64,000 nucleotides of DNA. It comes from Macrostomum hystrix. Lineage: Eukaryota > Animalia > Platyhelminthes. A model generated the notes under the pieces. The model saw nothing but the letters and a program-made list of their open reading frames with translations, did not search any database and had not been told where the DNA came from. Below, in pieces: positions 6,601 to 27,029 of the stretch. The stretch's first letter is position 1. Each line of letters opens with the position of its first letter. Position numbers and translations under genes: made by a program. The stretch covers positions 2,542,001-2,606,000 of the forward strand of contig CATNEN010000007.1 of assembly GCA_950097015.1 (NCBI GenBank), written 5' to 3'.

Positions 6601-7203
6601 TCAACGTTGATTTGCAGCGGCCGCGGCCGCCTCCGCCTTGATGGCAATTCTCAACTCATCGCACAGGCGCACAATTCGATCTGCTTCAGTGGCGAGCAAT
6701 GACAGCTGCGGCTGCTGCTGCTGCAGCTGTGCTAGAATCGCGTCTGGTCGCAGGTAGAGAGACAGGTCCACAAATGGATCGCTGTCGGGACCAGAAGATG
6801 AGTAGAAGTCGCCCTCGGCAACGCACGCATCGACCCCGATGCCGTCGTTCAGGTAAAACCGCCGGGCCCGCCGTCGATGCCGAATGCCGACGATGCGATC
6901 CCGCATGGCCTGTGGCACTCGCTCGCTAACGCGCAACCGATCGCCCGGAGCCGTCCGGACGTAGGGGAACGCTTCGGCAGTTCCGAACAGGCGGCGATGA
7001 ATTCCGGAGTCGCTGGTGACCTGCGCAGAGGTGGTCACCGTGATTCGATTGTCCACTGATGCGCCGTGACCCTCAGTGGGGTCGGCATTGTCCAGCAGGG
7101 TAACGTGTAGCCAGTTCAACGGGCGCTCCTCGACCCGTTCCAACTGCAGGCTGGCATTGTGGCACAGCACAGCCTCATAGGAGGCGGACACTCGGACATT
7201 GAC
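6601..7203 (-). CDS. Probable terminal exon of the helicase-RdRP-NTase gene (alternatively a separate ~202-aa gene of unknown function)
   Basis: GC-rich, non-repetitive 200-codon frame with a phase-0 acceptor (TGCAG|GTC at 7204/7203). It matches the phase-0 donor AAG|GTGAGC at 9369/9368. Confidence 0.55.
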   Translation of the reverse strand, partial: VNVRVSASYEAVLCHNASLQLERVEERPLNWLHVTLLDNADPTEGHGASVDNRITVTTSAQVTSDSGIHRRLFGTAEAFPYVRTAPGDRLRVSERVPQAMRDRIVGIRHRRRARRFYLNDGIGVDACVAEGDFYSSSGPDSDPFVDLSLYLRPDAILAQLQQQQPQLSLLATEADRIVRLCDELRIAIKAEAAAAAANQR

Positions 7204-10200
7204 CTGCATCAATGTTTGCGAATCAGCTATTTAGAAAGAGAGCAATGGAGGCGCTCTAGTGACACTGCACCTGATTCTACATTAACTCTTGCCAGCTAAG
7301 CAAAGCAAGTTGACTCCTTGATTTAGTATAGAGTATGGACCATTGGGTCGATGGATGGACCACGATGTTGGCCATCGTGAGAGGTTTGCACTGACTGGCC
7401 ATTTTGGTACCGAGCACACAAGGAAGTATATTGAACCAAGACAGCAGACCTATGAAACAACTTCCAGAATCACAAATAATCTGCATCTTCGAGACATTCA
7501 ACGATTCTCGTGGGGCGTCTGGTGGAAAAAGCACCAATATAGGCAAAAATATTCTGCTATCAAAGTTTCTTTATGTCGGCTATAACTGCTGGTTATAATG
7601 TACTAATTATATTGTTAATTGATACACTTTTGAACCAATTCGCCAAAGAGGTTTATACAGAGTAATGTCAGTTGTGCTTGTCACCAGGGTCTTCGACAGG
7701 AATCGCTGAATATCTCGAAAATGTTTACGTCGGATTTGAAAGTTAGTCGGATTTGTAAAGAACAGAAAATTTTGATCCAGATGGTGGGCTTTCACAAAAA
7801 TCGGTCTTTGGTTTGGGGGCTATTGTGAAGTAGACAGCTCATTTAGGTATCCTTCGGGAAAATTTTAGTGCCTGAGCAAGTGCTCTAGGATCAGATTATC
7901 GATGTATTTTAGAGGTTTACATTTGACGATGAGCTTTGTTTAGTTTTCAGCAGTCAGAATGGTCAAACGTTGAATTGCGCTCAGATTTCAAAGCTGGTGT
8001 TTCTGAACCCGCTTTCCTTAGCATCGGGAACTCTTCTAGCTCGTACAACTAGGTGAACGGAGAGACACACTCCGCCATGGCTCCTTTATACTCATTGCTG
8101 GTTAGCATACCATCGTTCAATTCGGGTGCCGAGGACCACATAGTAGCGTAGTTCTCGCCGCCACCACTGTTGTCTGGCTGCCAGAAGCTCCAAAGTCGAC
8201 TATCAATGCTGGAATTGCAGCTCACCCAGTACCAGCCTCCGGCTGGCTCAGCGCTGCCCGGCAGCTGCGTGCCCCCGAGTAGTGCGCTAAGCGAGTCGAT
8301 GCGAGCCAGTATGCCTCTGATGTGAGCCAGCTCAGCTGAGTCCGTGACGTCAGCCATGGTTGTGAGGCCTGGCAGTGAGTCGATTGAAGTCTTGGCTAGG
8401 TTCCAGTTCTTGAGATCCGAGTACAGCTTGTACTTGGTGCCGCAGAAGTCGTCAGCGAACCCGGCAGGACACAGAGTTCCGGCCGGCAGTCCCGACTGCT
8501 GCTTCACAAACACCTGCTTGATGCGAGTGCAGCTGCAGTCTCTCACGTACTTGCTGCACCTGTTGAACACGAACAGCTGGCACGGACCGTCGGCCACGCT
8601 GAATGCCTGGCAGTCAGTTGTTCCATCGCACAGACTAGCGCACTCCAGGTCAGATCTCGAGCTTAAGCGAGTCACTATGAACTGGGGCCTGAGACACAGC
8701 AGCCCAGGGACTTCATTGAAGATATTCGAATAGGCCAGCAGAGCTTTCGTCAGATAAACTACGATTACCAATGCCTTAGCAACCATTTTTTTGTATCTTG
8801 GTTGTGTTGTCTGACCGGACGCGAGCGCGATTAAGGTGTAAAATTTTACTGACGTGAAGCTTTTTAAGAGCTTAGTTTAACTGCTAAAGGTAGTAAAAGT
8901 CCCAAGTGACCTGAGCTTGGCTGTTTGCTTTTAAGGCTCAGGTAAATCTTCAGAGTGAGCTGTGAAGAATTGCAGTGCCGATGTGTCCGATGAATCTACA
9001 AGTCAACTATGCCAGCTGTCTGGATTACATCAACTGGACACCCACGCCTTGAAATCACGATTCTAGAAATTTCTCTTCTACGAGCTAAAAGCATCCACAG
9101 CGGATACCCCAAAGCTCCTAAAAGGAGTAAAGCCCTGATAGATTGAAGCCCATTAACAATGAAAACGCCTTTCAAATTTGCAAAAATGTCTGAAACGTAA
9201 TGGCAAGGTGAATCTGTCAGATCTCAGAATTTTCTCAGAATCTGTCAGATCATCAAATCAAACTCTGTTGTTTAAGCTCTGAAATCGCAGCTGTGGCTTA
9301 GAAGTAGCATGGCAGGAATTCGGAATCAGATCATAATTAGGAGAGTCACAACGAGGTGATAAGCTCACCTTGACTTCATGGCCCATCCGCTCCGGCAACG
9401 CGATGGTCGCCTCCGTCTGCACGAATCCCAAGCGAAGCAGAGCTTTAGAGAAGATCTCAAAGTCACCCTCGGAGCGCTGCGGCCGACGGCGCAGGCGTTC
9501 AGCGGTTGACGCCGGGTCAGCTTCAGCCGACTGCAGCCGGTAGAGGCCGCAGCCGAAGCCGCAGCCGAGGCGGCGATTCCGGCGGGCGGACTTCGCCGGC
9601 AGCGAGTTTGATGGCCGCTTGGAAGCCGACGGCTCGCCGTTTTCGTCGCGGCGACGCTTGTTGCCAGTTGACAGCGGCACCATCGGGACAGCGCCTAGAT
9701 GGTCGCGCTCGCTTTGAACAGTGGGCGGCGGCGGCGCCGGCTCAAAAGGCTGTCTGTCGAAGCTGTGTCGATACTTCTGACCCTTGGCCACGAAAGCGGC
9801 CATCTCTGCCAGCGAAAGGCTGGTTTGGGTGGCCGGCAGCGCCTCATCAGCGTTCAACAGGTAGAACTGGCCAGGCCGGATTGTCAGCTCCAGACTGGCC
9901 GCCAGATCGGACCGGCCAGTCGGCATGCCGGAAACCTGAGTGCAAATTATTTAGGGAGAAATTTGTTTCGCGAAGTGCAATGATGAGACGCGTTGTCAGT
10001 CAATTTTTTCGGATTTCTCACCTGCCGCATGAGCGCTTGGAACAGTCGTCTGGCAGCTGCTGAAAGCCAAAGCTCCCTGTCAGGACAGTCGGGGGGCGGG
10101 CACCTCAGGAGGCTGGCCGGCTTGAGCCGATGATCGCCTATCAAGCCCGAGACGCAGTTTAACAGGCGAAAACGGCAATCGTCAGACAGGCAACCGACTG

Positions 10201-13200
10201 CCAAGGACAAGCTGGCGCCGTCCATGAAGTAGCGACAGGCCCGCCGACGGTGGCAAGTATTTAGAAGCCAACCAGCCGCGCCGGCCATCAGGCGAACCTC
10301 GCGACGCAGCCGGGAAATCGCGGCGGCGTCGCCCTCGGCAGTGAGGCGAAGCAGCGGCGGACGCTCAGGCAACGGCACTAGGCTGACCTTGGAGCAGCCG
10401 GTGGCCGCGGCCAGTCGAGCTTCGTGGAATTCGGGCACCCTGGACAGCTCCTGGCTGAGTCGATTAGGCAGCGTCTTGGCGAAGCGAGCTCCGGTGCCGG
10501 CGCCAACGTCGGTGCCGCCGCGTAGGTCGGCCGCAGCGGCGGCAGCCAGAACGGCGACGTCCCGAGTGTAATGAAGGCGCAGCAGGGCGGCCCGCGCGCA
10601 TTTGGCTGCGTAGCGAACAGCCGCGGCCTCTATGGTAACCGTCTGGCGAGATGGAATCGGCCAGCAATAGGTCACGTGACCATCCAGACCGGCGCAGCTT
10701 CGATAGAAGCCGATGATGCGAGCTCCGAGCGCGGCTGCTGCGTCGGCATCGGCATCGGGCAGGCAAAGCTGGTCGGTAATGATAGCGAGTTGGTTTACAA
10801 GCGACTGTCCCAGGTCTCTGGACTGTCCGAGTTGTCCTGAATTTCCGAGTGACTGAACTGAGCCAACTAGGGCGCCGGCGCCGTCGTACTCCAGGCGTAG
10901 GCAGTGCAATGCTAGCGCGTAGAACTCGGCAGTCGGCATCTTTAATTGACGCTCGCCATCCATGTCGACAGCGTCGTTCAAGTGGTCGTTGTCGGCGTCT
11001 TCGGCGGAGCGGACGATGCCGGCAGCTCGGGCCCAGTCAACCAGCAGGCGCAGCAGAGGCAGGCGGTGCGGACAGGCCGAGTACAAGCCCAGCAGGTAGT
11101 CGGTCTTCTCTAAGCCGATCGTGTTCATGCTGATGTCGCAGGCCACAGAGTCGTCGCCGTCAACGGTCAGGATGCAGCGAATAAGCGGGACTCTGTGAGT
11201 CAGCAGGTCCTCCTTGGCTGTGGCCACTTTGTCCAGCGCCGGAGACACAGCGTTGCGCAGCCAATGTCGGTGGAGATCCGGATCGGGCAGTGCAGCCAGC
11301 TCTGGCGTTGGCGGCGAGGACAATTTTACGCACAGATCGACATCCGAGCCGACGGCGTCGCACAGAAAGACCGAGGCGGAGCCGTAGACGGCAACCCTCA
11401 GGCTATCGCTAAAGTCGGCAATCGCAGTGGACACCAGAGCAGCGGCGCTATCGGCTCTGCCGACTGCCTCAGTCAGGGCCGGCAGCGACTCGCGCAGGCT
11501 GGCCAGGGCGGAGTGACCAACGTCCAGTCGAAGATTTCTCTCCGCGTTCGGCGCTCCAAAGGTGGTAATGGAGAGCTGTTGAGCGATGTCGCAGAGAATG
11601 TCGGCCATCACCCATGGGAAGCTCAGGCCCAGCGGCAAGCGGCTGCGGCTGTCAGAGTCGTCAAGACCGGCTGCGTCGTCGAGGTCGATGTCGCCATCTG
11701 CGTTGGATTCCTTTCGAGCGGCGCCGGCAGAAGCCAGGTACCAGGCGGCGGCCTTGGCACGCCGCTTGTTGACAATGTCTCCTCCGGCCAGGCTCGGATC
11801 GGAATCGAACTCGCGACGATATCTTTAAAATTGTTTTTATGTGGGATTATTCGATTTCCTTTCACGGATAAAATAAGGAAAATGTGATGGGGAGAAAGCA
11901 AGAATATAACGAATGGGTCACAAAGAAGTGCGTTTCACTTCTGAAACTTGTGACCTTGTCCTTAAAGCTGGTTACCGTTCACTGCGACCATAATTTAATA
12001 TTTGCAGGAGGATTGCGGGGCAATGGCACGCAAAAAATGTGACACTAGACCCACAGCCAACGAGGAGGCAATTCTTCCCATTTCGCTGACTCCTGAGCAC
12101 ACACGCTCACAGATACCGTACACAGGCACACGCTCATACAGGGGTGTAAATCTGCCCAGGCTTTCTCATCGTCAGGCAGTGTACACTCTCACTGTGACTT
12201 CGAGGTTGTCCCTCAAGGGCCTAAATTCCACGACAAGCCCGCAAGCCTTCTCTCCGCGGCTGCGCCCCAAATAAATGTGGCCTCGCTGCGGAATCGAGCT
12301 CAGGACCTTAATAATAATAATAATTGCAGGAGGGCTGCGGGCAATGACACATAGTTTGGTGACACTAGACCCGCAGCCAGCGAGGAGGCAATTCTGCCCA
12401 TTTCGCTGACTCCTGAGCACACACGCACACAGATACCGTACGCAGGCATACGCTCACACAGGTGTGTACATCTGCCCTGACTTCCTCATCGTCAGGCAGT
12501 GTTCACTTCACTGTGCCTTGGAGGTTGGCCCTCAAGGGCGTGAATTGCACGACAAGCCCCCAAGCCTTCTCTCCGCGGCTGCGCCCCAAATAAATGTGGC
12601 CTCGCCGTGGAATCGAACTTAGGGACCGTGGTGCGAGTGGCAAACGCGTTAACCGCTCTGCCACCGACCCCCCTGCTCAGGACCTTGGTGCGAGGGGCAA
12701 ACGCGTTAGACCACTCTGCCACTCAACAACCCCTTTGACTATGATTTTGTTACCATTCTGTGCGACTGTTTTGTGCGCCCCTGTGTGACCGTGTTACAAT
12801 GGATAACGGGATATAAGTTCGTCGGCGAAATATTCTACCCAGGCTTTCAATGCCATGTCTTCTTTAGCCATAGTCAGCAAAAACATTGGTCACGAAACGG
12901 TAACAGGTGACAGTGACGGTGACAGCCCCTTTTTGTGACCATTCTGTCTTATACGGAAAAGTGAGTACTTCACAGCCCACCCCTCCCCTTGGTGACGCAC
13001 CTGGCAACCAAGGCGTCCCTGGCTCCCCTGAGGCTCCGCTGCGCCGCGCCCAGATCAGAGCGCAGCGTCGAGTGCCAGCGCATGCAGCGGGTCAGCAGCA
13101 GCTCGCGCTCGCTGGCGAGGCCCCACTGGCCCAGCAGCGCCCGCAGGTCCAGCCTGTAGCGGCCCAGTTCAATGCGCGCCTTCTCGGCGAAGGCCTCCCA

Positions 13201-16200
13201 GCCAGGCCAGGTCAGGACCCGCCTGCCACAGGCGTCAGCTAGGGTGCTGGTCGGCGGGGCGGTGGCCTGCTCCAGAAGGTCCCAGTCCATCGCGTAGGTG
13301 CGACAGCGGCGGTAGAGATGGCCAAGGAGCTTCTGGGACTGGTAGGTCTGGTGCTGCGGCTTCTCCATGAAGTCCGGGTAACCAAAATCATTAACCGCCT
13401 TACGTGCATCCACCGGAACCTGATGGGGAGTAACAGAACCATTAGCCGACTTCAAGTGTGAGTTACTATTAGTAGTGTCAATGATAGAGCATTTGACACA
13501 ATACATCCAGAGCATGCACAAGTGATTCAGAAAACACGGGGCACGCTTTGCAACACCCCGAAACCACATAACACACCCAGATCCCACATAACACACACAG
13601 ATCCCACATAACACACACAGATCCCACATAACACACCCAGATCCCACATAACACACACAGATCCCATATAACGCACCCAGATCCCACATAACACACCCAG
13701 ATCCCACATAACACACACAGATCCCACATAACACACCCAGATCCCACATAACACACCCAGATCCCACATAACACACACAGATCCCATATAACGCACCCAG
13801 ATCCCACATAACACACCCAGATCCCACATAACACACACAGATCCCATATAACGCACTCAGAAGCCACATAACGCACCCAGATCCCACATAACGCACCCAG
13901 ATCCCACATAACGCACCCAGATCCCACATAACACACCCAGATCCGATATAACACACCCAGATCCCACATAACGCACCCAGATCCCACATAACGCACCCAG
14001 ATCCCACATAACACACCCAGATCCCATATAACGCACTCAGAAGCCACATAACGCACCCAGATCCCACATAACGCACCCAGATCCCACATAACGCACCCAG
14101 ATCCCACATAACACACCCAGATCCGATATAACACACCCAGATCCCACATAACACACCCAGATCCGACATAACACACCCAGATCCGACATAACACACCCAG
14201 ATCCGACATATCACACCCAGATCCCACATAACACACCCAGATCCCACATAACCCACCCAGATCCGACATAACACGCCCAGATCCGACAGTACACACCCAG
14301 ATCCGACATAACACACCCAGATCCCACATAACGCACCCAGATCCAACATAACACACCCAGATCCCACATAGCACACCCAGATCCCACATAGCACACCCAG
14401 ATCCCACATAACACACCCAGATCCCACATAACACACCCAGATCCCACATAACACACACAGAACATGCATGACCCACCTTTGGCACAATGCCAGTCTTTGG
14501 AAAGTCGACAGCCACAGACTGGGACTCGGCCAGTTTCCTGGCCAGCGGGTCGATTGCACCTTGAACCATCTGGTCGCACAGAGCCAGGTGCATGTGAGCA
14601 ACCCGGCCCAAGAAGGTGTTCTCCAGATTGGCCAAGTAGAAGTCAGCCAGCAGGTGCGGGGCGGAGACATTGGTGCCCGGCTGAGCTGTGGGCGGATTCG
14701 CAGCCAGGGCCGAGTAGTTCAATGCCGGGTGAATTGCTTGCGACGGCGGCACAAGGTTCGAGTCCCAGATGACGCTGAACTGATCACCATCGAGGTCTCC
14801 ACCGCTGCAGTCGGCGGCGAGGGATGCCTGACAGTCCGCGCGAGCTGGCATGAGCAACACGTTCACCTGCGGTGAGATTAGGATGTGGTGAAGATGAAGA
14901 TGAGATGAGGAACTCAAGCTGGGGATCTGTGTGAAATCAAGCTGGGGATCTGTGTGAACTCAAGCTGGGGATCTGTGTGAAATCAAGCTGGGGATCTGTG
15001 TGTGAACTCAAGCTGAGGATCTGTGTGAAATCAAGCTGGGGATCTGTGTGAACTCAATCTGAGCATCTGTGTGAAGTCAAGCTGAGGATCTGTGTGTGAA
15101 CTCAAGCTGAGGATCTGTGTGAACTCAAGCTGAGTATCTGTGTGAAGTCAAGCTGAGGATCTGTGTGTGAACTCAAGCTGAGGATCTGTGTGAACTCAAG
15201 CTGAGGATCTGTGTGAACTCAATCTGAGGATCAGTGAGAACTCAATCTGAGGATCTGTGAGAACTCAAGCTGGGGATCTGTGTGAAATCAATCTGAGGAT
15301 CTGTGTGAACTCAATCTGAGGATCAGTGAGAACTCAATCTGAGGATCTGTGTGAACTCAAGCTGAGTATCTGTGTGAACTCAAGCTGAGTATCTGTGTGA
15401 ACTCAAGCTGAGGATCTGTGTGTGAACTCAAGCTGAGGATCTGTGTGAACTCAAGCTGAGGATCTGTGTGAACTCAATCTGAGGATCAGTGAGAACTCAA
15501 TCTGAGGATCTGTGAGAACTCAAGCTGGGGATCTGTGTGAAATCAAGCTGGGGATCTGTGTGAACTCAATCTGAGGATCTGTGAGAACTCAATCTGAGGA
15601 TCTGTGAGAACTCAATCTGAGGATCTGTGAGAACTCAAGCTGGGGATCTGTGAGAACTCAAGCTGGGGATCTGTGTGAACTCAAGCTGAGGATCTGTGTG
15701 AACTCAATCTGAGGATCTGTGAGAACTCAATCTGAGGATCTGTGAGAACTCAAGCTGGGGATCTGTGAGAACTCAATCTGAGGATCTGTGAGAACTCAAG
15801 CTGGGGATCTGTGAGAACTCAAGCTGAGGACCCGAGGGCAGTCTCTACTCTCACCCATTTCGATAAGCCCGGCTTCTCCTGATCAGTCACAGCCCTGGCG
15901 ACACGCAAGTCGCCCGGATGCAGGCAGGGGTTGCGGTAGATGAGCACACGACCTTGCACCGTTTGCAACACGCCGTCATCCTCGCGGCAAATCTGGAATG
16001 AAAGTAGAAAATATCCCTAGAAGACGAAGGATTAATGAAAAAATATATACCAACAAATATACCAAAATCTAATAAAAAATCTGCTTTGAGTCGAATCCCA
16101 AATTGAGGCTGCTCACCCGCAGGTAGACCTCTCCCTCTGCCAGCAGGCCGGTGGGATCCGCAGCTCCCATGACCCGGCAACCCTCGGCCACCGGCAGGGC

Positions 16201-25200: not shown

Positions 25201-25816
25201 GAGAGGAGAGGAAGGTGGAGAGGAGAGGGAGGTGGAGAGGAGAGGGAGGTGGTGGTGGAGAGGAAGGTGGAGCGGAGAGGAAGGTGGAGAGGAGAAGAAG
25301 GTGGAGCGGTGAGGAAGGTGGAGCGGAGATCATTAAATAGATAGATCAGAAGACATTTCTCATTTGATTGACATGTTGTGCATCTCTGATATAATGGGCT
25401 GCATTGATTAGAATGCCAAAAATAAAACAAAAATTTTTGTAATCCACTGACTTGTGAGCAAAGAACTGCTGGGTATCGCGCCTTTCAATCTCCATCAGTC
25501 GGTTGACAAGTTGGTGAGGCTTTTCCTTGCGACCGAATCGCTTCCCTAGCAGAACAATTTTGTCCAGGCCGAATGCGACAAAGCTGACCCCATTGGGCCC
25601 ATATGGAAGCTCTTTGCCAAGAACAGCTTTGCACACAGCGCAGACAACATTCTGAACGCCACGTTTATCGCCTGCCTCAGAGTGAAGACCATTGCGTGCA
25701 AACACGAGTTCCCTGAGCTCTGGCTTCAGTGCCAAGTGGGTAGAATTGGATTGAAAGAAGAACAGTTCCCGCAGTTCTACTAATTGAGCCCCACACCTGG
25801 GATTACCACATTGCAT
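6601..25816 (-). CDS. Multidomain RNA-silencing protein: RLR-CTD-like Zn domain + DExH helicase + RNA-dependent RNA polymerase + Cid1/TUTase-like nucleotidyltransferase + C-terminal unknown domains
   Basis: Exons: 25816-25452, 24789-24420, 24143-23925, 23568-23122, 22588-22298, 21888-21523, 21084-20214, 19615-18852, 17569-17386, 17305-17149, 16863-16593, 16326-16117, 15992-15855, 14866-14477, 13419-13001, 11822-10022, 9935-9369 (or read-through to the stop at 9258), and 7203-6601. All junctions are GT-AG with matching phase. Total 8433 nt (2810 aa), or 7941 nt (2646 aa) for the short form. Confidence 0.85.
8049..8786 (-). CDS. Secreted PAN/apple domain + C-type lectin protein, intronless, 245 aa
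   Basis: Hydrophobic N-terminus ([18 protein letters not shown]), PAN-type CASLC...DCQAFSV...CQL, then CTLD features [20 protein letters not shown] and a terminal EC. Confidence 0.8.
   Translation of the reverse strand: MVAKALVIVVYLTKALLAYSNIFNEVPGLLCLRPQFIVTRLSSRSDLECASLCDGTTDCQAFSVADGPCQLFVFNRCSKYVRDCSCTRIKQVFVKQQSGLPAGTLCPAGFADDFCGTKYKLYSDLKNWNLAKTSIDSLPGLTTMADVTDSAELAHIRGILARIDSLSALLGGTQLPGSAEPAGGWYWVSCNSSIDSRLWSFWQPDNSGGGENYATMWSSAPELNDGMLTSNEYKGAMAECVSPFT
9947..11822 (-). CDS. Exon encoding the RdRP C-terminus plus a Pol-beta-superfamily nucleotidyltransferase (Cid1/TUTase/TRF4-like)
   Basis: RdRP tail RAKAAAWY, then [18 protein letters not shown] (GS..DxD at 11336-11383), third Asp in ACDISMN (11135-11137), [14 protein letters not shown] and a FYALALHCL helix. 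The coding exon ends at the donor 10022/10021. Confidence 0.85.
11991..12725 (-). mobile_element. Tandem tRNA-derived SINEs: one 5'-truncated copy, one full copy and a duplicated head
   Basis: A-box-like GTGGCAGAGCGGTT, B-box-like AGTTCGATTCC and an (ATT)n tail. The same body recurs at 29875, 38790, 40292 and 42880. Confidence 0.85.
13001..19615 (-). CDS. Eukaryotic (QDE-1/RDR/RRF-type) RNA-dependent RNA polymerase domain, exons 8-15
   Basis: Motifs [64 protein letters not shown], catalytic SGGDLDGD (DLDGD at 14783-14797), [15 protein letters not shown] and LGHLYR. Confidence 0.97.
13560..14460. repeat. 20-bp intronic tandem repeat (CAGATCCCACATAACACACC)
   Basis: Visible array filling the RdRP intron 13420-14476. 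Confidence 0.95.
14905..15830. repeat. ~23-bp intronic tandem repeat (GAACTCAAGCTGAGGATCTGTGT)
   Basis: Visible array filling the RdRP intron 14867-15854. Confidence 0.95.
18024..18466. repeat. Inverted repeat with ~103-bp arms (18024-18127 and 18364-18466) in an RdRP intron
   Basis: Arms compared by eye show about 9 mismatches. A degenerate single copy lies near 35168-35250. Confidence 0.9.
19790..20205. repeat. ~29-bp tandem repeat (GAGTGAGCTCAGCAACACAAACGGAGCCA) abutting an exon donor
   Basis: Visible array in intron 19616-20213. Confidence 0.9.
21523..24789 (-). CDS. RIG-I/Dicer-type SF2 DExH helicase domain, exons 2-6
   Basis: Q motif PRRYQLE, Walker A MPTGSGKT (24531-24554), Ia PLVFQQ, DECHH (DECH at 23958-23969), [30 protein letters not shown] and VI QSRGRAR. 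Confidence 0.95.
21940..25330. repeat. Five separate intronic minisatellites in the helicase region
   Basis: 21940-22180 (TGTCACTCTGACCACAATG), 22770-23110 (30-bp GTGAGATCCCATTCTGAGGCAACCCATGCA), 23630-23900 (CAGTCCCACAGTCTATCAGCTG), 24165-24390 (GCCAATCAGAA-based) and 24850-25330 (GGAAGGTGGAGAGGAGA-type). Confidence 0.9.
25452..25816 (-). CDS. First coding exon: Zn-binding domain resembling the RIG-I-like receptor C-terminal domain (Yippee/Mis18 fold)
   Basis: MQCGNPRC...THLAL...[16 protein letters not shown]...FVAF follows the CxxC..H..CxxC..G..Y spacing of the RLR CTD. The ATG has GCC context and an in-frame upstream TAG. Confidence 0.65.
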
Positions 25817-27029
25817 GGCTTCAGCTTTTGGCTAGGAGTGATTGTTGGCACAGATTTCCCTGAAAAAAAGATTTGCTTATTTTATTACAAAAAAAGTTTT
25901 TTTCGTTGTATCAGAAATTAAATATTCATTATTAACTATTTTAGCATTATAAGACTCTATATTGTGCGGGAAATATATAGAGAATTTACCAGCTTGCAAA
26001 AAATAACTCCTTTACTGGAGCAAGTGAGAAAAGCTATTTTTATTTTGTTTGTTTCAAGTTTAAATAAGCTCGAAAAAAAATTAACAAATCGCGGCAAAGG
26101 TGAGACGACAGGAGCGCGGGGGCTTAAAACGAGCCGGGCAGCCAGCCACCCCACGCCCCCCCGCCTCCAGAGTACATGCACGCATGCACAAAGTGCCACC
26201 CCCGGTGTGTCTAACACACCTTACTCAGAGAGTAACGAACGCATTAGACTAGTTGAGTTAGCAGCCAGTTAGCTGTATAGTCGGGTATATCTATTAAGAC
26301 TATATTCCAAAATACATCTGTACAATTAGGGACGAGTAATTTTTTGTTATTACTTAAACTAAAAAAAATTATAGATATACTTAATTCATTTTACTTTAAC
26401 TATTTGGTTTTTAATAAAAATGAACAATCAATTTAACAGCTTAATTTTATAAACAGTAAAGATTCAATGGTTCCACATGACCTTGTAATGCTAAGTAATT
26501 TCTAAAGATCTAATCATGAGCATCAATGTGAAAATTAATATCACTGAAAAAACTTCCTTTTTAAACAAAATTTTAGTCTGATAATAACTCTGGGGATTCT
26601 GAAATGTAGCAGAAAAACCTACAACTGTAAGACATTTAAATCAGACTAATTATTCCCAATTACAATATTTAGTGACCAAAACTTTCTACACTCTAAAAAA
26701 ACAAGATAAGTTGTTTATAAACTTAACTTAGCATTACATCTATACATTTTACTATTTCAAATCATCTCCTGTGGCCACTTATAAATAGCACTGTTACTAC
26801 TTTGATTAACTTATTTCACTAATGAGTATAACAGGTTTACAATACAATAATCTCAAATACTCCCATATTTCTTCACTACAGTGCTAATAATAGTCTAATT
26901 TTTTTGTTTGTGGAAAGGCTAATTTTCTTTCTTATGGTGACATAGTCAAGATGCTTTATTATAATTTATAATAAGGATTAATTCAGTTGAGCCAACTGTC
27001 GTACGGCGTCGAATTGCACTGAATTATAT

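What the first reader, a model, noticed from the sequence alone, without database searches (positions are those of the whole stretch)
10022..13419. The RdRP is spliced in frame to a Cid1/TUTase-like nucleotidyltransferase
The phase-2 donor GCC AG|GTGCGT (13001/13000) joins the acceptor TTTTAAAG|A TAT CGT (11823/11822), giving DALVAR-YRREFD...RAKAAAWY. The last RdRP helix therefore lies in the same 1801-nt exon as the NTase, so the two cannot easily be separate genes. The catalytic triad is intact. Whether it adds U, A or alternating UG tails cannot be read from the motifs; pUG-like self-recruitment of the RdRP is a hypothesis.
Basis: partly seen in the sequence, partly recalled or inferred. 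Interest (0 to 1): 0.85.

Follow-up and report, generated by a model that had tools for sequence, protein, structure and literature searches.

The report
RNA copier fused to RNA tailer
In this animal genome one long gene joins an RNA-unwinding part, an RNA-copying enzyme and an RNA-tailing enzyme into a single protein; transcripts confirm the predicted splice, and the same little-studied design occurs from sponges and hydras to algae.

Summary
Transcript contigs from three runs of one study remove exactly the predicted 1178-nt GT..AG intron (13000-11823) and join 13001 to 11822 in frame. One contig bridges it properly (262 + 1105 nt); two others reach across by only 24-27 nt.

The 1801-nt exon starts with the RdRP's own last helices. 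It continues into a complete two-lobed Cid1/GLD-2-type terminal nucleotidyltransferase:
- Pfam PF22600 scores 28.3 bits against a cut-off of 27.
- The family profile matches GLD-2 at E 3e-11.
- The predicted structure matches TUT1, mtPAP, GLD-2 and Cid1 at Z about 20.
- The motifs GS, DxD and D are intact and kept in 122-125 of 125 relatives.

A KH-like fold and a conserved tail follow the transferase.

The whole gene (about 25.8-6.6 kb, minus strand) is colinear with 2300-3000-aa helicase-RdRP-NTase proteins. These occur in Macrostomum, Hydra, a sponge, an acoel, Artemia, dinoflagellates, an oomycete and streptophytes.

Helicase-RdRP fusions are published. The transferase part is visible in Pfam annotation, but I found it mentioned only in one preprint figure legend.

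Activity, nucleotide choice and template tailing are inferred, not shown.

The scan had already noted a paralogue on another piece of this genome.

The parts
14465..14866 (-). RdRP catalytic exon (bounds approximate, from tblastn). The DLDGD motif lies at 14783-14797.
   Evidence: Pfam PF05183, E 4.3e-27, model positions 414-538. Translation. tblastn of P0077 residues 1516-1649.
13001..13419 (-). RdRP exon: the end of PF05183 plus the following helices. It ends in the phase-2 donor GCC AG|GT.
   Evidence: Pfam PF05183 model positions 545-581 of 582, E 0.0012, which is below the cut-off when this piece is scored alone. Contigs cover 13001-13421 and continue upstream for 931 nt (record 15). P0077 residues 1645-1774.
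11823..13000 (-). Intron of 1178 nt, GT..AG, holding two copies of a tRNA-like SINE-type repeat.
   Evidence: The joint 11822->13001 appears in X3, X4 and X5. There is no depth on its non-repeat parts and very high depth on the repeats. Sequence.
11561..11822 (-). The first 87 residues of the 1801-nt exon. These are the RdRP's own C-terminal helices (AWY and LSFPW motifs), with an acidic insertion specific to this protein.
   Evidence: Family profile positions 8-89 match RDR2 residues 1047-1127, E 3.4e-14. Alignment A1. Low pLDDT over residues 44-60.
10514..11560 (-). Two-lobed terminal nucleotidyltransferase (palm plus fingers/central domain), exon residues 88-436. Catalytic residues: G147-S148 at 11378-11383, D160 at 11342-11344, D162 at 11336-11338, D229 at 11135-11137. 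K239 lies at 11105-11107.
   Evidence: PF22600 at 28.3 bits, cut-off 27. PDB profile hits: GLD-2 3e-11, Tailor 5e-9, Cid1 3e-7. AF2 model with pLDDT 77. Foldseek and VIA Z 19-20.6 over residues 88-436. Residue conservation.
10256..10489 (-). KH-like domain (beta-alpha-alpha-beta-beta-alpha), without the GXXG loop.
   Evidence: This topology appears in the window's own model at residues 445-522, pLDDT about 81-84. The model of relative P0003:2085-2357 matches type I KH domains: Foldseek E 6e-4, TM 0.70-0.76; VIA Z 8.0-8.7, rmsd 2.4-2.6 A over 70-74 residues.
10022..10255 (-). First part of a conserved C-terminal module (YFMEGS motif and others). It ends in the phase-0 donor CAG|GTGAGA.
   Evidence: Alignments A1 and A2. 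blastp shows that the C-terminal module is conserved across the family.
9936..10021 (-). Intron of 86 nt.
   Evidence: Joint 9933->10020 (cut +2) in X3, X4, X5 and X1.
9369..9935 (-). Next coding exon (189 codons). It holds the conserved [13 protein letters not shown] segment and then a low-complexity basic stretch.
   Evidence: Contigs cover 9367-9933 and carry on for 807 nt beyond (record 9). P0077 residues 2335-2512. Alignment A1 columns 830-890.
6604..7203 (-). Probable last coding exon, with the stop codon. It lies outside the stretch laid with reads.
   Evidence: The frame continues from 9369. tblastn: P0077 residues 2503-2567 and Hydra P0081 residues 2375-2460. No direct RNA evidence for this joint.

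Best explanation
The region is the 3' half of one gene of about 19 kb on the minus strand. Its product, roughly 2600-2700 aa, carries these parts in order:
- an N-terminal zinc-type domain;
- a Dicer/RIG-I-type helicase;
- a eukaryotic RdRP;
- with no break in the chain, a Cid1/GLD-2-type terminal ribonucleotidyltransferase;
- a KH-like domain and a conserved tail.

Shown here: the splice, the frame, the identity of the domains, intact catalytic motifs in the RdRP and the transferase, and conservation of this architecture in many eukaryotes.

Inferred: the transferase is active and works in cis with the RdRP on the same RNA. The most likely mode is that it adds a short untemplated 3' tail to a template RNA, held by the KH-like domain or the helicase, so that the RdRP can start on it or is kept on it. 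That is how separate transferase subunits serve RdRPs in the fission-yeast and Tetrahymena RDRC complexes and in the C. elegans MUT-2/RDE-3 pathway. Which nucleotide is added is unknown.
For: - Splice and frame.
- RdRP tail in the same exon as the transferase.
- Transferase identity: PF22600 above its cut-off in the window's protein, and matched at E<=0.01 in 26 of 26 relatives; profile hits to GLD-2, Tailor, CutA, TbTUT4, Cid1, TUT7, URT1 and Trf4; structure Z 19-20.6 over the whole two-lobed module.
- Active-site conservation in 125 sequences, some of them near-duplicates: G 125, S 123, D160 123, D162 124, D229 122.
- Colinearity of the whole gene with M. lignano P0077, Hydra P0081 and P0003.
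- The same helicase + RdRP + NTase Pfam architecture in Hydra, Hydractinia, Rhopilema, Oopsacas, Artemia and others.
- The full module is also found by the A1 profile in Aphanomyces, Diplonema and Dendronephthya proteins that have no precomputed PF22600 hit.
- The helicase is of the Dicer/RLR type, tested on the M. lignano relative.
- The association of RdRPs with separate nucleotidyltransferases in RDRC rests on established knowledge (Motamedi 2004; Lee and Collins 2007; Talsky and Collins 2010; Shukla 2020). I did not re-read these papers here.
Against: - There is no biochemical or small-RNA evidence for activity, specificity or order of action.
- Only one contig bridges the key junction by the tool's own 31-letter rule, and all three runs come from one study.
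- A contig does not prove one full-length mRNA from the helicase to the stop codon.
- The Pfam score of the window's own domain is barely above the cut-off (28.3 against 27), and no PAP-associated (PF03828) hit is found.
- The Asn of the NT motif in GLD-2 and Tailor is a Lys here, so the NTP pocket differs from characterised enzymes.
- In Nematostella, whose RdRPs are reported to have the helicase, no secondary siRNAs were detected (PMC12768352). The classical amplification role may therefore not apply.
Confidence: 0.7

Rival explanations
1. The transferase tails the products rather than the templates. It would mark RdRP products or small RNAs with a 3' tail for stability, turnover, sorting or Dicer hand-over, and would not prime or recruit the RdRP.
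For: The same domain evidence applies as for the best explanation. TUTases such as Tailor, TUT4/7 and URT1, which are among the structural matches, act on finished RNAs. This last point is established knowledge.
Against: Nothing in the sequence distinguishes template tailing from product tailing. Known RdRP-associated transferases (Cid12, Rdn1/2, MUT-2) are linked to templates (knowledge, not tested here).
Confidence: 0.2
2. The transferase module is a catalytically silent scaffold or RNA-binding module, like the inactive N-terminal module of TUT4/7. It would be kept only for structure or RNA grip.
For: The Pfam score is weak. Lys replaces the conserved Asn of the NTP-binding NT motif. There is no PF03828 hit.
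Against: All three carboxylates and the GS motif are present in the window. They are kept in 122-125 of 125 relatives across very distant eukaryotes. Dead modules usually lose them.
Confidence: 0.08
3. Two neighbouring genes, or a transcript artefact: the RdRP and the transferase are made separately, and the joined contigs are assembly chimeras or a rare read-through.
For: Only one strictly bridging contig, from one study. Contigs cannot show a complete mRNA.
Against: - The joint is an exact in-frame GT..AG intron removal seen in three runs.
- The exon downstream begins with RdRP sequence and has no start codon context of its own.
- Relatives from many phyla encode the same continuous chain, including NCBI gene models for Hydra, Hydractinia, Artemia and Rhopilema.
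Confidence: 0.02

Closest known systems
Helicase-RdRP fusion proteins of Dictyostelium (RrpA/B/C), peronosporomycete oomycetes, Hydra and Nematostella
   Same: An N-terminal DEAD/ResIII + Helicase_C module is followed by PF05183 in proteins of about 2300-2700 aa. This architecture is described in PMC4791657 and PMC3661229. The window's gene is colinear with the Hydra protein.
   Different: Those papers draw only the helicase and the RdRP; they do not mention a transferase, a KH-like domain or a C-terminal module. Here the transferase module is shown for Hydra, an oomycete (Aphanomyces), an octocoral and others. Dictyostelium and Nematostella sequences were not in hand. One preprint legend says that two amoebozoan RdRPs carry a PAP nucleotidyltransferase domain (10.1101/2023.10.19.562841).
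RDRC complexes: S. pombe Rdp1-Hrr1-Cid12 and Tetrahymena Rdr1-Rdn1/Rdn2
   Same: The same three activities (RdRP, Cid1-family nucleotidyltransferase, helicase in the yeast case) work as one unit on the same RNA. This is established knowledge.
   Different: There the parts are separate subunits; here they form one polypeptide. Orthology of this transferase to Cid12 or Rdn1 was not tested. The helicase here is of the Dicer/RLR type; I did not check how it relates to Hrr1.
C. elegans RdRP module (EGO-1/RRF-1 with the Dicer-related helicase DRH-3) plus the poly(UG) polymerase MUT-2/RDE-3
   Same: An RLR/Dicer-type helicase partners an RdRP, and a Pol-beta transferase makes the 3' tails that recruit the RdRP. 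This is established knowledge. Dicer-related helicase structures are among the PDB hits of the helicase.
   Different: These are separate proteins. A UG-alternating activity cannot be inferred.
Cid1 / GLD-2 (TENT2) / TUT1 / mtPAP / TUT7 catalytic modules
   Same: A two-lobed palm + fingers fold with Z 19-20.6, rmsd 3.2-3.8 A and 254-283 aligned residues. It has hGS, DxD and a third Asp, and a WA[KR]..G.. helix.
   Different: The module is fused behind an RdRP. A Lys (121 of 125) stands where GLD-2 and Tailor have the Asn of the NT motif. There is no PF03828 profile hit. A single-sequence search of 1.8 billion proteins at E<=0.001 returned no standalone TUTase; the 73 hits look like members of this family or pieces of them, although I did not check each one.

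Membership tests
Non-canonical poly(A) polymerase / TUTase (Cid1-GLD-2-TENT) branch of the Pol-beta nucleotidyltransferases | hG[GS] motif followed by DxD, plus a third carboxylate on the neighbouring strand. | tested here: met
   G147 and S148, D160-V-D162, D229 in CDISMN. Kept in 122-125 of 125 relatives. Aligned to the same motifs of GLD-2 and Tailor.
Non-canonical poly(A) polymerase / TUTase (Cid1-GLD-2-TENT) branch of the Pol-beta nucleotidyltransferases | Profile match to the palm domain above the curated threshold. | tested here: met
   PF22600 at 28.3 bits against a cut-off of 27, residues 130-248. This is marginal for the window alone, but 26 of 26 family members match at E<=0.01, best 4e-14. 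The family profile against PDB gives GLD-2 at 3e-11.
Non-canonical poly(A) polymerase / TUTase (Cid1-GLD-2-TENT) branch of the Pol-beta nucleotidyltransferases | Two-lobed catalytic module: palm plus the helical central (PAP-associated) domain. | tested here: met
   The AF2 model aligns over residues 88-436 to TUT1, mtPAP, GLD-2, Cid1, CutA, RET2, TUT7 and URT1 at Z 19-20.6. This is a predicted structure, not a solved one.
Non-canonical poly(A) polymerase / TUTase (Cid1-GLD-2-TENT) branch of the Pol-beta nucleotidyltransferases | Sequence-profile match to the PAP-associated domain (PF03828). | tested here: not met
   No PF03828 hit in any of the 26 members at E<=0.01. HMMER does align the WARxxG and following helices to GLD-2's central domain.
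Non-canonical poly(A) polymerase / TUTase (Cid1-GLD-2-TENT) branch of the Pol-beta nucleotidyltransferases | Asn of the N-T motif after the third Asp. From memory of the Cid1 and TbTUT4 structures, it contacts the ribose and base of the incoming NTP. | tested here: not met
   Lys at that aligned position (K239) in 121 of 125 sequences; GLD-2 and Tailor have Asn there. The role of the Asn is recalled, not tested.
Non-canonical poly(A) polymerase / TUTase (Cid1-GLD-2-TENT) branch of the Pol-beta nucleotidyltransferases | Untemplated 3' nucleotide addition to RNA. | not testable with these tools
   Needs an enzyme assay.
Eukaryotic cellular RdRP (PF05183) | Pfam match and the DxDGD catalytic loop. 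| tested here: met
   PF05183 at E 4.3e-27 on 14917-14400. DLDGD lies at 14783-14797. The gene is colinear with proteins that score E 1e-116 to 1e-129.
Helicase-RdRP(-NTase) clade (Hydra, Macrostomum, oomycete type) | Colinear chain: Dicer/RLR-type helicase, RdRP, transferase module, KH-like/C-terminal module. | tested here: met
   18 colinear tblastn segments of P0077 from 25819 to 7006. DECH box in the ORF at 24269-23913. Helicase type tested on P0077. The single-mRNA status upstream of 13421 rests on contig length only.
RDRC (RdRP + Cid12/Rdn-type transferase + helicase) | Orthology of the transferase to Cid12, Rdn1 or MUT-2. | not tested
   None of these sequences was available from a tool. 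Among solved structures Trf4 scores far lower (E 0.0036) than GLD-2 or Cid1.

The most novel reading that the evidence does not exclude
The transferase-KH module may be a universal, catalytically active but overlooked part of the whole helicase-RdRP clade, including the genetically studied Dictyostelium Rrp proteins and the virus-mimic-induced cnidarian RdRPs. Each of these proteins would then be a self-sufficient single-chain RDRC. It would sense or unwind an RNA, tail its 3' end with a nucleotide preference set by the unusual Lys pocket, and copy it. That would be a natural 'Rosetta stone' showing that the RdRP-tailing partnership is ancestral in eukaryotes.
Probability: 0.35. Interest if true: 0.8.

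Novelty: new member of a known kind. Interest (0 to 1): 0.6.

Why it matters
RdRPs of non-nematode animals have no settled function. Amphioxus and Nematostella show no classical secondary siRNAs (PMC6396948, PMC12768352).

A conserved, apparently active tailing enzyme and a KH-like RNA grip welded to the RdRP give a concrete, testable mechanism for this clade. Published helicase-RdRP domain maps (Dictyostelium, oomycetes, Hydra, Nematostella) appear to be missing about 800 residues of functional protein.

A covalent fusion of the three RDRC activities is independent evidence that RdRP and 3' tailing belong together. It also offers a single-polypeptide system for biochemistry and structural work. 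Flatworms of this group and Hydra are open to RNAi knock-down, so the idea can be tested in vivo.

Tried and rejected
- A single-sequence PDB search with only the 87-residue RdRP tail of the window found nothing. The claim rests on the family profile and the alignment.
- NCBIfam gave no hit for the exon product, as expected for a prokaryote-centred library.
- ARAGORN found no tRNA gene in the intron, although the repeat looks tRNA-like.
- Subfamily or nucleotide assignment from structure was rejected. TUT1, mtPAP, GLD-2, Cid1, CutA, RET2, TUT7 and URT1 all tie within one Z unit, and the profile alignments to Cid1 stop before its nucleotide-recognition loop.
- A cGAS/OAS-like signalling-nucleotide synthase was considered because of the RLR-type helicase. 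I rejected it as unlikely, because no such structure appears among the top 50 matches of either search.
- Literature: eight full-text searches were run (a ninth call failed on a term limit), and several papers were read (PMC8191739, PMC6396948, PMC4791657, PMC3661229, PMC12768352). None describes the RdRP-transferase fusion. One preprint legend mentions it for two amoebozoan proteins.
- Read laying was given 5971 letters. The tandem-repeat intron at about 14400-13480 was left out on purpose.


Full report
**What is in the sequence**

On the minus strand, the exon 13419-13001 ends in GCC AG|GTGCGT, and the next open frame begins behind TTTTAAAG at 11822. The upstream exon is 419 nt, so the donor is phase 2. 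AG plus the A at 11822 makes Arg, and the product reads ...DALVA-R-YRREFD.... From 11821 the frame is open for exactly 600 codons, down to a CAG|GTGAGA donor at 10022.

**Transcript evidence**

The one search for sequencing runs returned four runs of one study (X3-X6). Each holds 0.56-0.65 of the sampled words of 10022-13419, which is about the exonic share of that stretch. It also returned two small-share runs of a second study.

I laid X3, X4, X5 and X1 on 7500-13470. That is 5971 letters, and I left out the tandem-repeat intron further upstream on purpose. The results:
- A joint from 11822 to 13001, skipping 1178 letters with GT..AG ends on the gene's strand, appears in X3, X4 and X5.
X3 and X5 cross by 24 and 27 letters and agree.
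- Non-repeat intron sequence and the intergenic stretch 7900-9299 carry essentially no depth.
- The next intron (10021-9936, 86 nt) is skipped in all four runs, including the second study.
- Contigs run on for 931 nt upstream of 13421 and 807 nt downstream of 9367.

The runs' type is not on record. Exact GT..AG skipping and the empty introns show that they are transcript assemblies. A contig is not a full-length mRNA, and all the evidence for the key junction comes from one study.

**Is the upstream side really RdRP, and does the RdRP cross the junction?**

- The exon at about 14866-14465 matches PF05183 at E 4.3e-27 and carries DLDGD.
- The exon 13419-13001 holds the last positions of that Pfam model (545-581 of 582; E 0.0012 when scored alone).
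- A profile built from 26 relatives of the downstream exon (alignment A1) matches, with its positions 8-89, the extreme C-terminus of Arabidopsis RDR2 (7roz residues 1047-1127, E 3.4e-14).
- The window's KAAAWY...[14 protein letters not shown] aligns there with RDR2's ASAWY...LSFPWIVGDVLLDI.

The 87 residues alone gave no PDB hit. An acidic insertion specific to this protein splits the two motifs.

**The transferase**

- *Pfam.* Residues 130-248 of the exon product fall in PF22600 (MTPAP-like palm) at 28.3 bits. This is just above the cut-off of 27. All 26 aligned relatives match it at E<=0.01, the best at 4e-14.
- *Sequence profile against PDB.* The family profile hits GLD-2 (3e-11), Tailor (5e-9), CutA, TbTUT4, Cid1 (3e-7), MEAT1, TUT7, TUT4, URT1 and Trf4 (0.0036).
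- *Predicted structure.* An AlphaFold2 model of the 600 residues has mean pLDDT 77, and above 90 over most of residues 100-270. Foldseek finds only non-canonical poly(A)/poly(U) polymerases at the top. In the VIA second look it aligns over residues 88-436 to TUT1, mtPAP, GLD-2, Cid1, CutA, RET2, TUT7 and URT1, with Z 19-20.6, rmsd 3.2-3.8 A and 254-283 residues. Both lobes of the catalytic module are therefore present.
- *Catalytic residues.* G147-S148, D160-x-D162 and D229 are invariant in the 26 sequences. In 125 family sequences aligned to the profile they are kept in 122-125. Some of these sequences are near-duplicates.
- *Two departures from characterised enzymes.* There is no PF03828 profile hit. 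A Lys (121 of 125) stands where GLD-2 and Tailor have the Asn of their N-T motif.
- *Specificity.* It cannot be assigned, because the structural matches tie and the sequence alignments stop short of the nucleotide-recognition loop.

**What follows the transferase**

Residues 445-522 (window 10489-10256) are predicted as beta-alpha-alpha-beta-beta-alpha. I modelled the equivalent C-terminal region of a relative (P0003:2085-2357, pLDDT 83). I used the relative because the module spans two exons in the window and cannot be referenced as one piece.

Its first 85 residues match type I KH domains: Foldseek E 6e-4 and TM 0.70-0.76; an exhaustive VIA search gave Z 8.0-8.7, rmsd 2.4-2.6 A, with KH domains filling the first 36 rows. 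The GXXG loop is absent, so RNA binding is only a suggestion.

The rest of the module, about 240 residues, is conserved through the whole family. It has no fold assignment.

**The whole gene and its family**

tblastn of the 3058-aa Macrostomum lignano protein P0077 gives 18 colinear segments from 25819 to 7006. It runs without a gap across the junction: residues 1645-1774 lie on 13422-13009 and residues 1777-2339 on 11824-10022. Hydra P0081 and P0003 behave alike.

Pfam finds DEAD/ResIII, Helicase_C, RdRP and PF22600 in P0003, Hydra P0008/P0081 and P0063. For dinoflagellate P0012 the PF22600 score is below the cut-off. For P0077, Pfam finds only the helicase and the RdRP. The helicase of P0077 is closest to the Dicer, LGP2, RIG-I and MDA5 helicases.

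A single-sequence HMMER scan of 1.8 billion representatives with the 600 residues gave 73 hits. Many are 2200-2900 aa long, with the match near residues 1750-2000. No ordinary standalone TUTase was among them.

Named sources of the architecture:
- Macrostomum lignano;
- Hydra vulgaris (three loci), Hydractinia and Rhopilema;
- the sponge Oopsacas;
- the acoel Convolutriloba;
- Artemia;
- the dinoflagellates Prorocentrum/Polarella and Effrenium;
- the liverwort Riccia and the alga Mesotaenium.

The A1 profile also finds the complete module in helicase-RdRPs without a precomputed PF22600 hit: Aphanomyces astaci (E 9e-126), Diplonema papillatum and the octocoral Dendronephthya. Plant and tick RdRPs match only the RdRP tail, and the fungal ones checked gave no hit.

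The nearest relative is only 44% identical over the exon, so the organism is not M. lignano. I did not try to name it.

**How it most likely works**

Shown: one reading frame joins an RdRP with an intact catalytic loop to a transferase with an intact and strongly conserved active site. A helicase lies upstream, and a KH-like domain lies next to the transferase.

Inferred from established knowledge of RDRC (S. pombe Rdp1-Hrr1-Cid12; Tetrahymena Rdr1 with Rdn1/2, where template tailing influences initiation) and of C. elegans MUT-2/RDE-3 pUG tails: the transferase adds an untemplated 3' tail to the RNA that the RdRP will copy, and fusion guarantees hand-over. I put 0.7 on 'active transferase acting in cis with the RdRP'. 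Within that, I put about half on template tailing rather than product tailing.

**Comparison with what is known, and novelty**

The helicase-RdRP arrangement is published for Dictyostelium, peronosporomycete oomycetes, Hydra and Nematostella (PMC4791657, PMC3661229). Those papers show no transferase.

Surveys of animal and flatworm RdRPs do not mention it either (PMC6396948, PMC8191739), nor does the 2026 Nematostella RNAi study (PMC12768352).

[quoted passage not shown] The 2014 Burroughs-Ando-Aravind review could not be read.

Public Pfam annotation already lists PF22600 on dozens of these proteins.

The window's gene is therefore a new member of an existing, sequenced but functionally uncharacterised family. 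What is under-appreciated is the family-wide, catalytically conserved transferase-KH module.

**Limits**

- Contig data come from one main study.
- The structures are predicted.
- The KH assignment rests on a relative and on Z of about 8.
- The 9369->7203 joint and everything upstream of 13421 are supported by homology and contig length, not by laid reads.
- There are no functional data.

Noticed in passing
window 12040-12660 (inside the intron 13000-11823): There are two direct copies of a repeat of about 290 nt with a tRNA-like head (SINE type). Transcript-contig depth over them reaches thousands, against about 10 on the exons, so this is a very abundant, expressed repeat family. ARAGORN calls no tRNA there.
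   Followed up: partly
window about 13480-14400: The intron upstream of exon 13419 is a tandem repeat of about 900 bp (units like GTGTGTTATGTGGGATCTGG). It produces long false ORFs of 480-566 aa on the minus strand.
   Followed up: no
window 8049-8786, minus strand: A 245-aa ATG-started ORF with a hydrophobic N-terminus lies inside the intron 9368-7204 of the big gene, on the same strand. It has only a weak PAN_4 hit (E 0.014). The few contigs on it are 95-99% alike, so they may come from a paralogue.
   Followed up: partly
window 7500-7899: Transcript contigs cover this stretch (depth 8-24), although it lies in the same intron and holds no long ORF. It may be an unannotated exon, a UTR or a repeat.
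   Followed up: no
window 11105-11107 (K239 of the exon product): A family-wide Lys (121 of 125 sequences) stands at the position where HMMER aligns the Asn of the N-T motif of GLD-2 and Tailor. It is a possible determinant of an unusual nucleotide preference.
   Followed up: partly
window 11640-11700: An acidic insertion ([17 protein letters not shown]) lies between the AWY and LSFPW motifs of the RdRP tail. It is absent from all 25 aligned relatives and has low confidence in the model.
   Followed up: no
window 9560-9700 (exon 9935-9369): A low-complexity basic stretch ([16 protein letters not shown] ... RRNRR) looks like a nuclear-localisation signal. This is inference from the sequence only.
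   Followed up: no
window 25463-25819, and P0003 residues 2-89: The N-terminal region before the helicase is conserved with Hydra and P0003. In P0003 it gives weak Yippee-Mis18 and SelR zinc-fold hits (E 0.0014 and 0.0035).
   Followed up: partly
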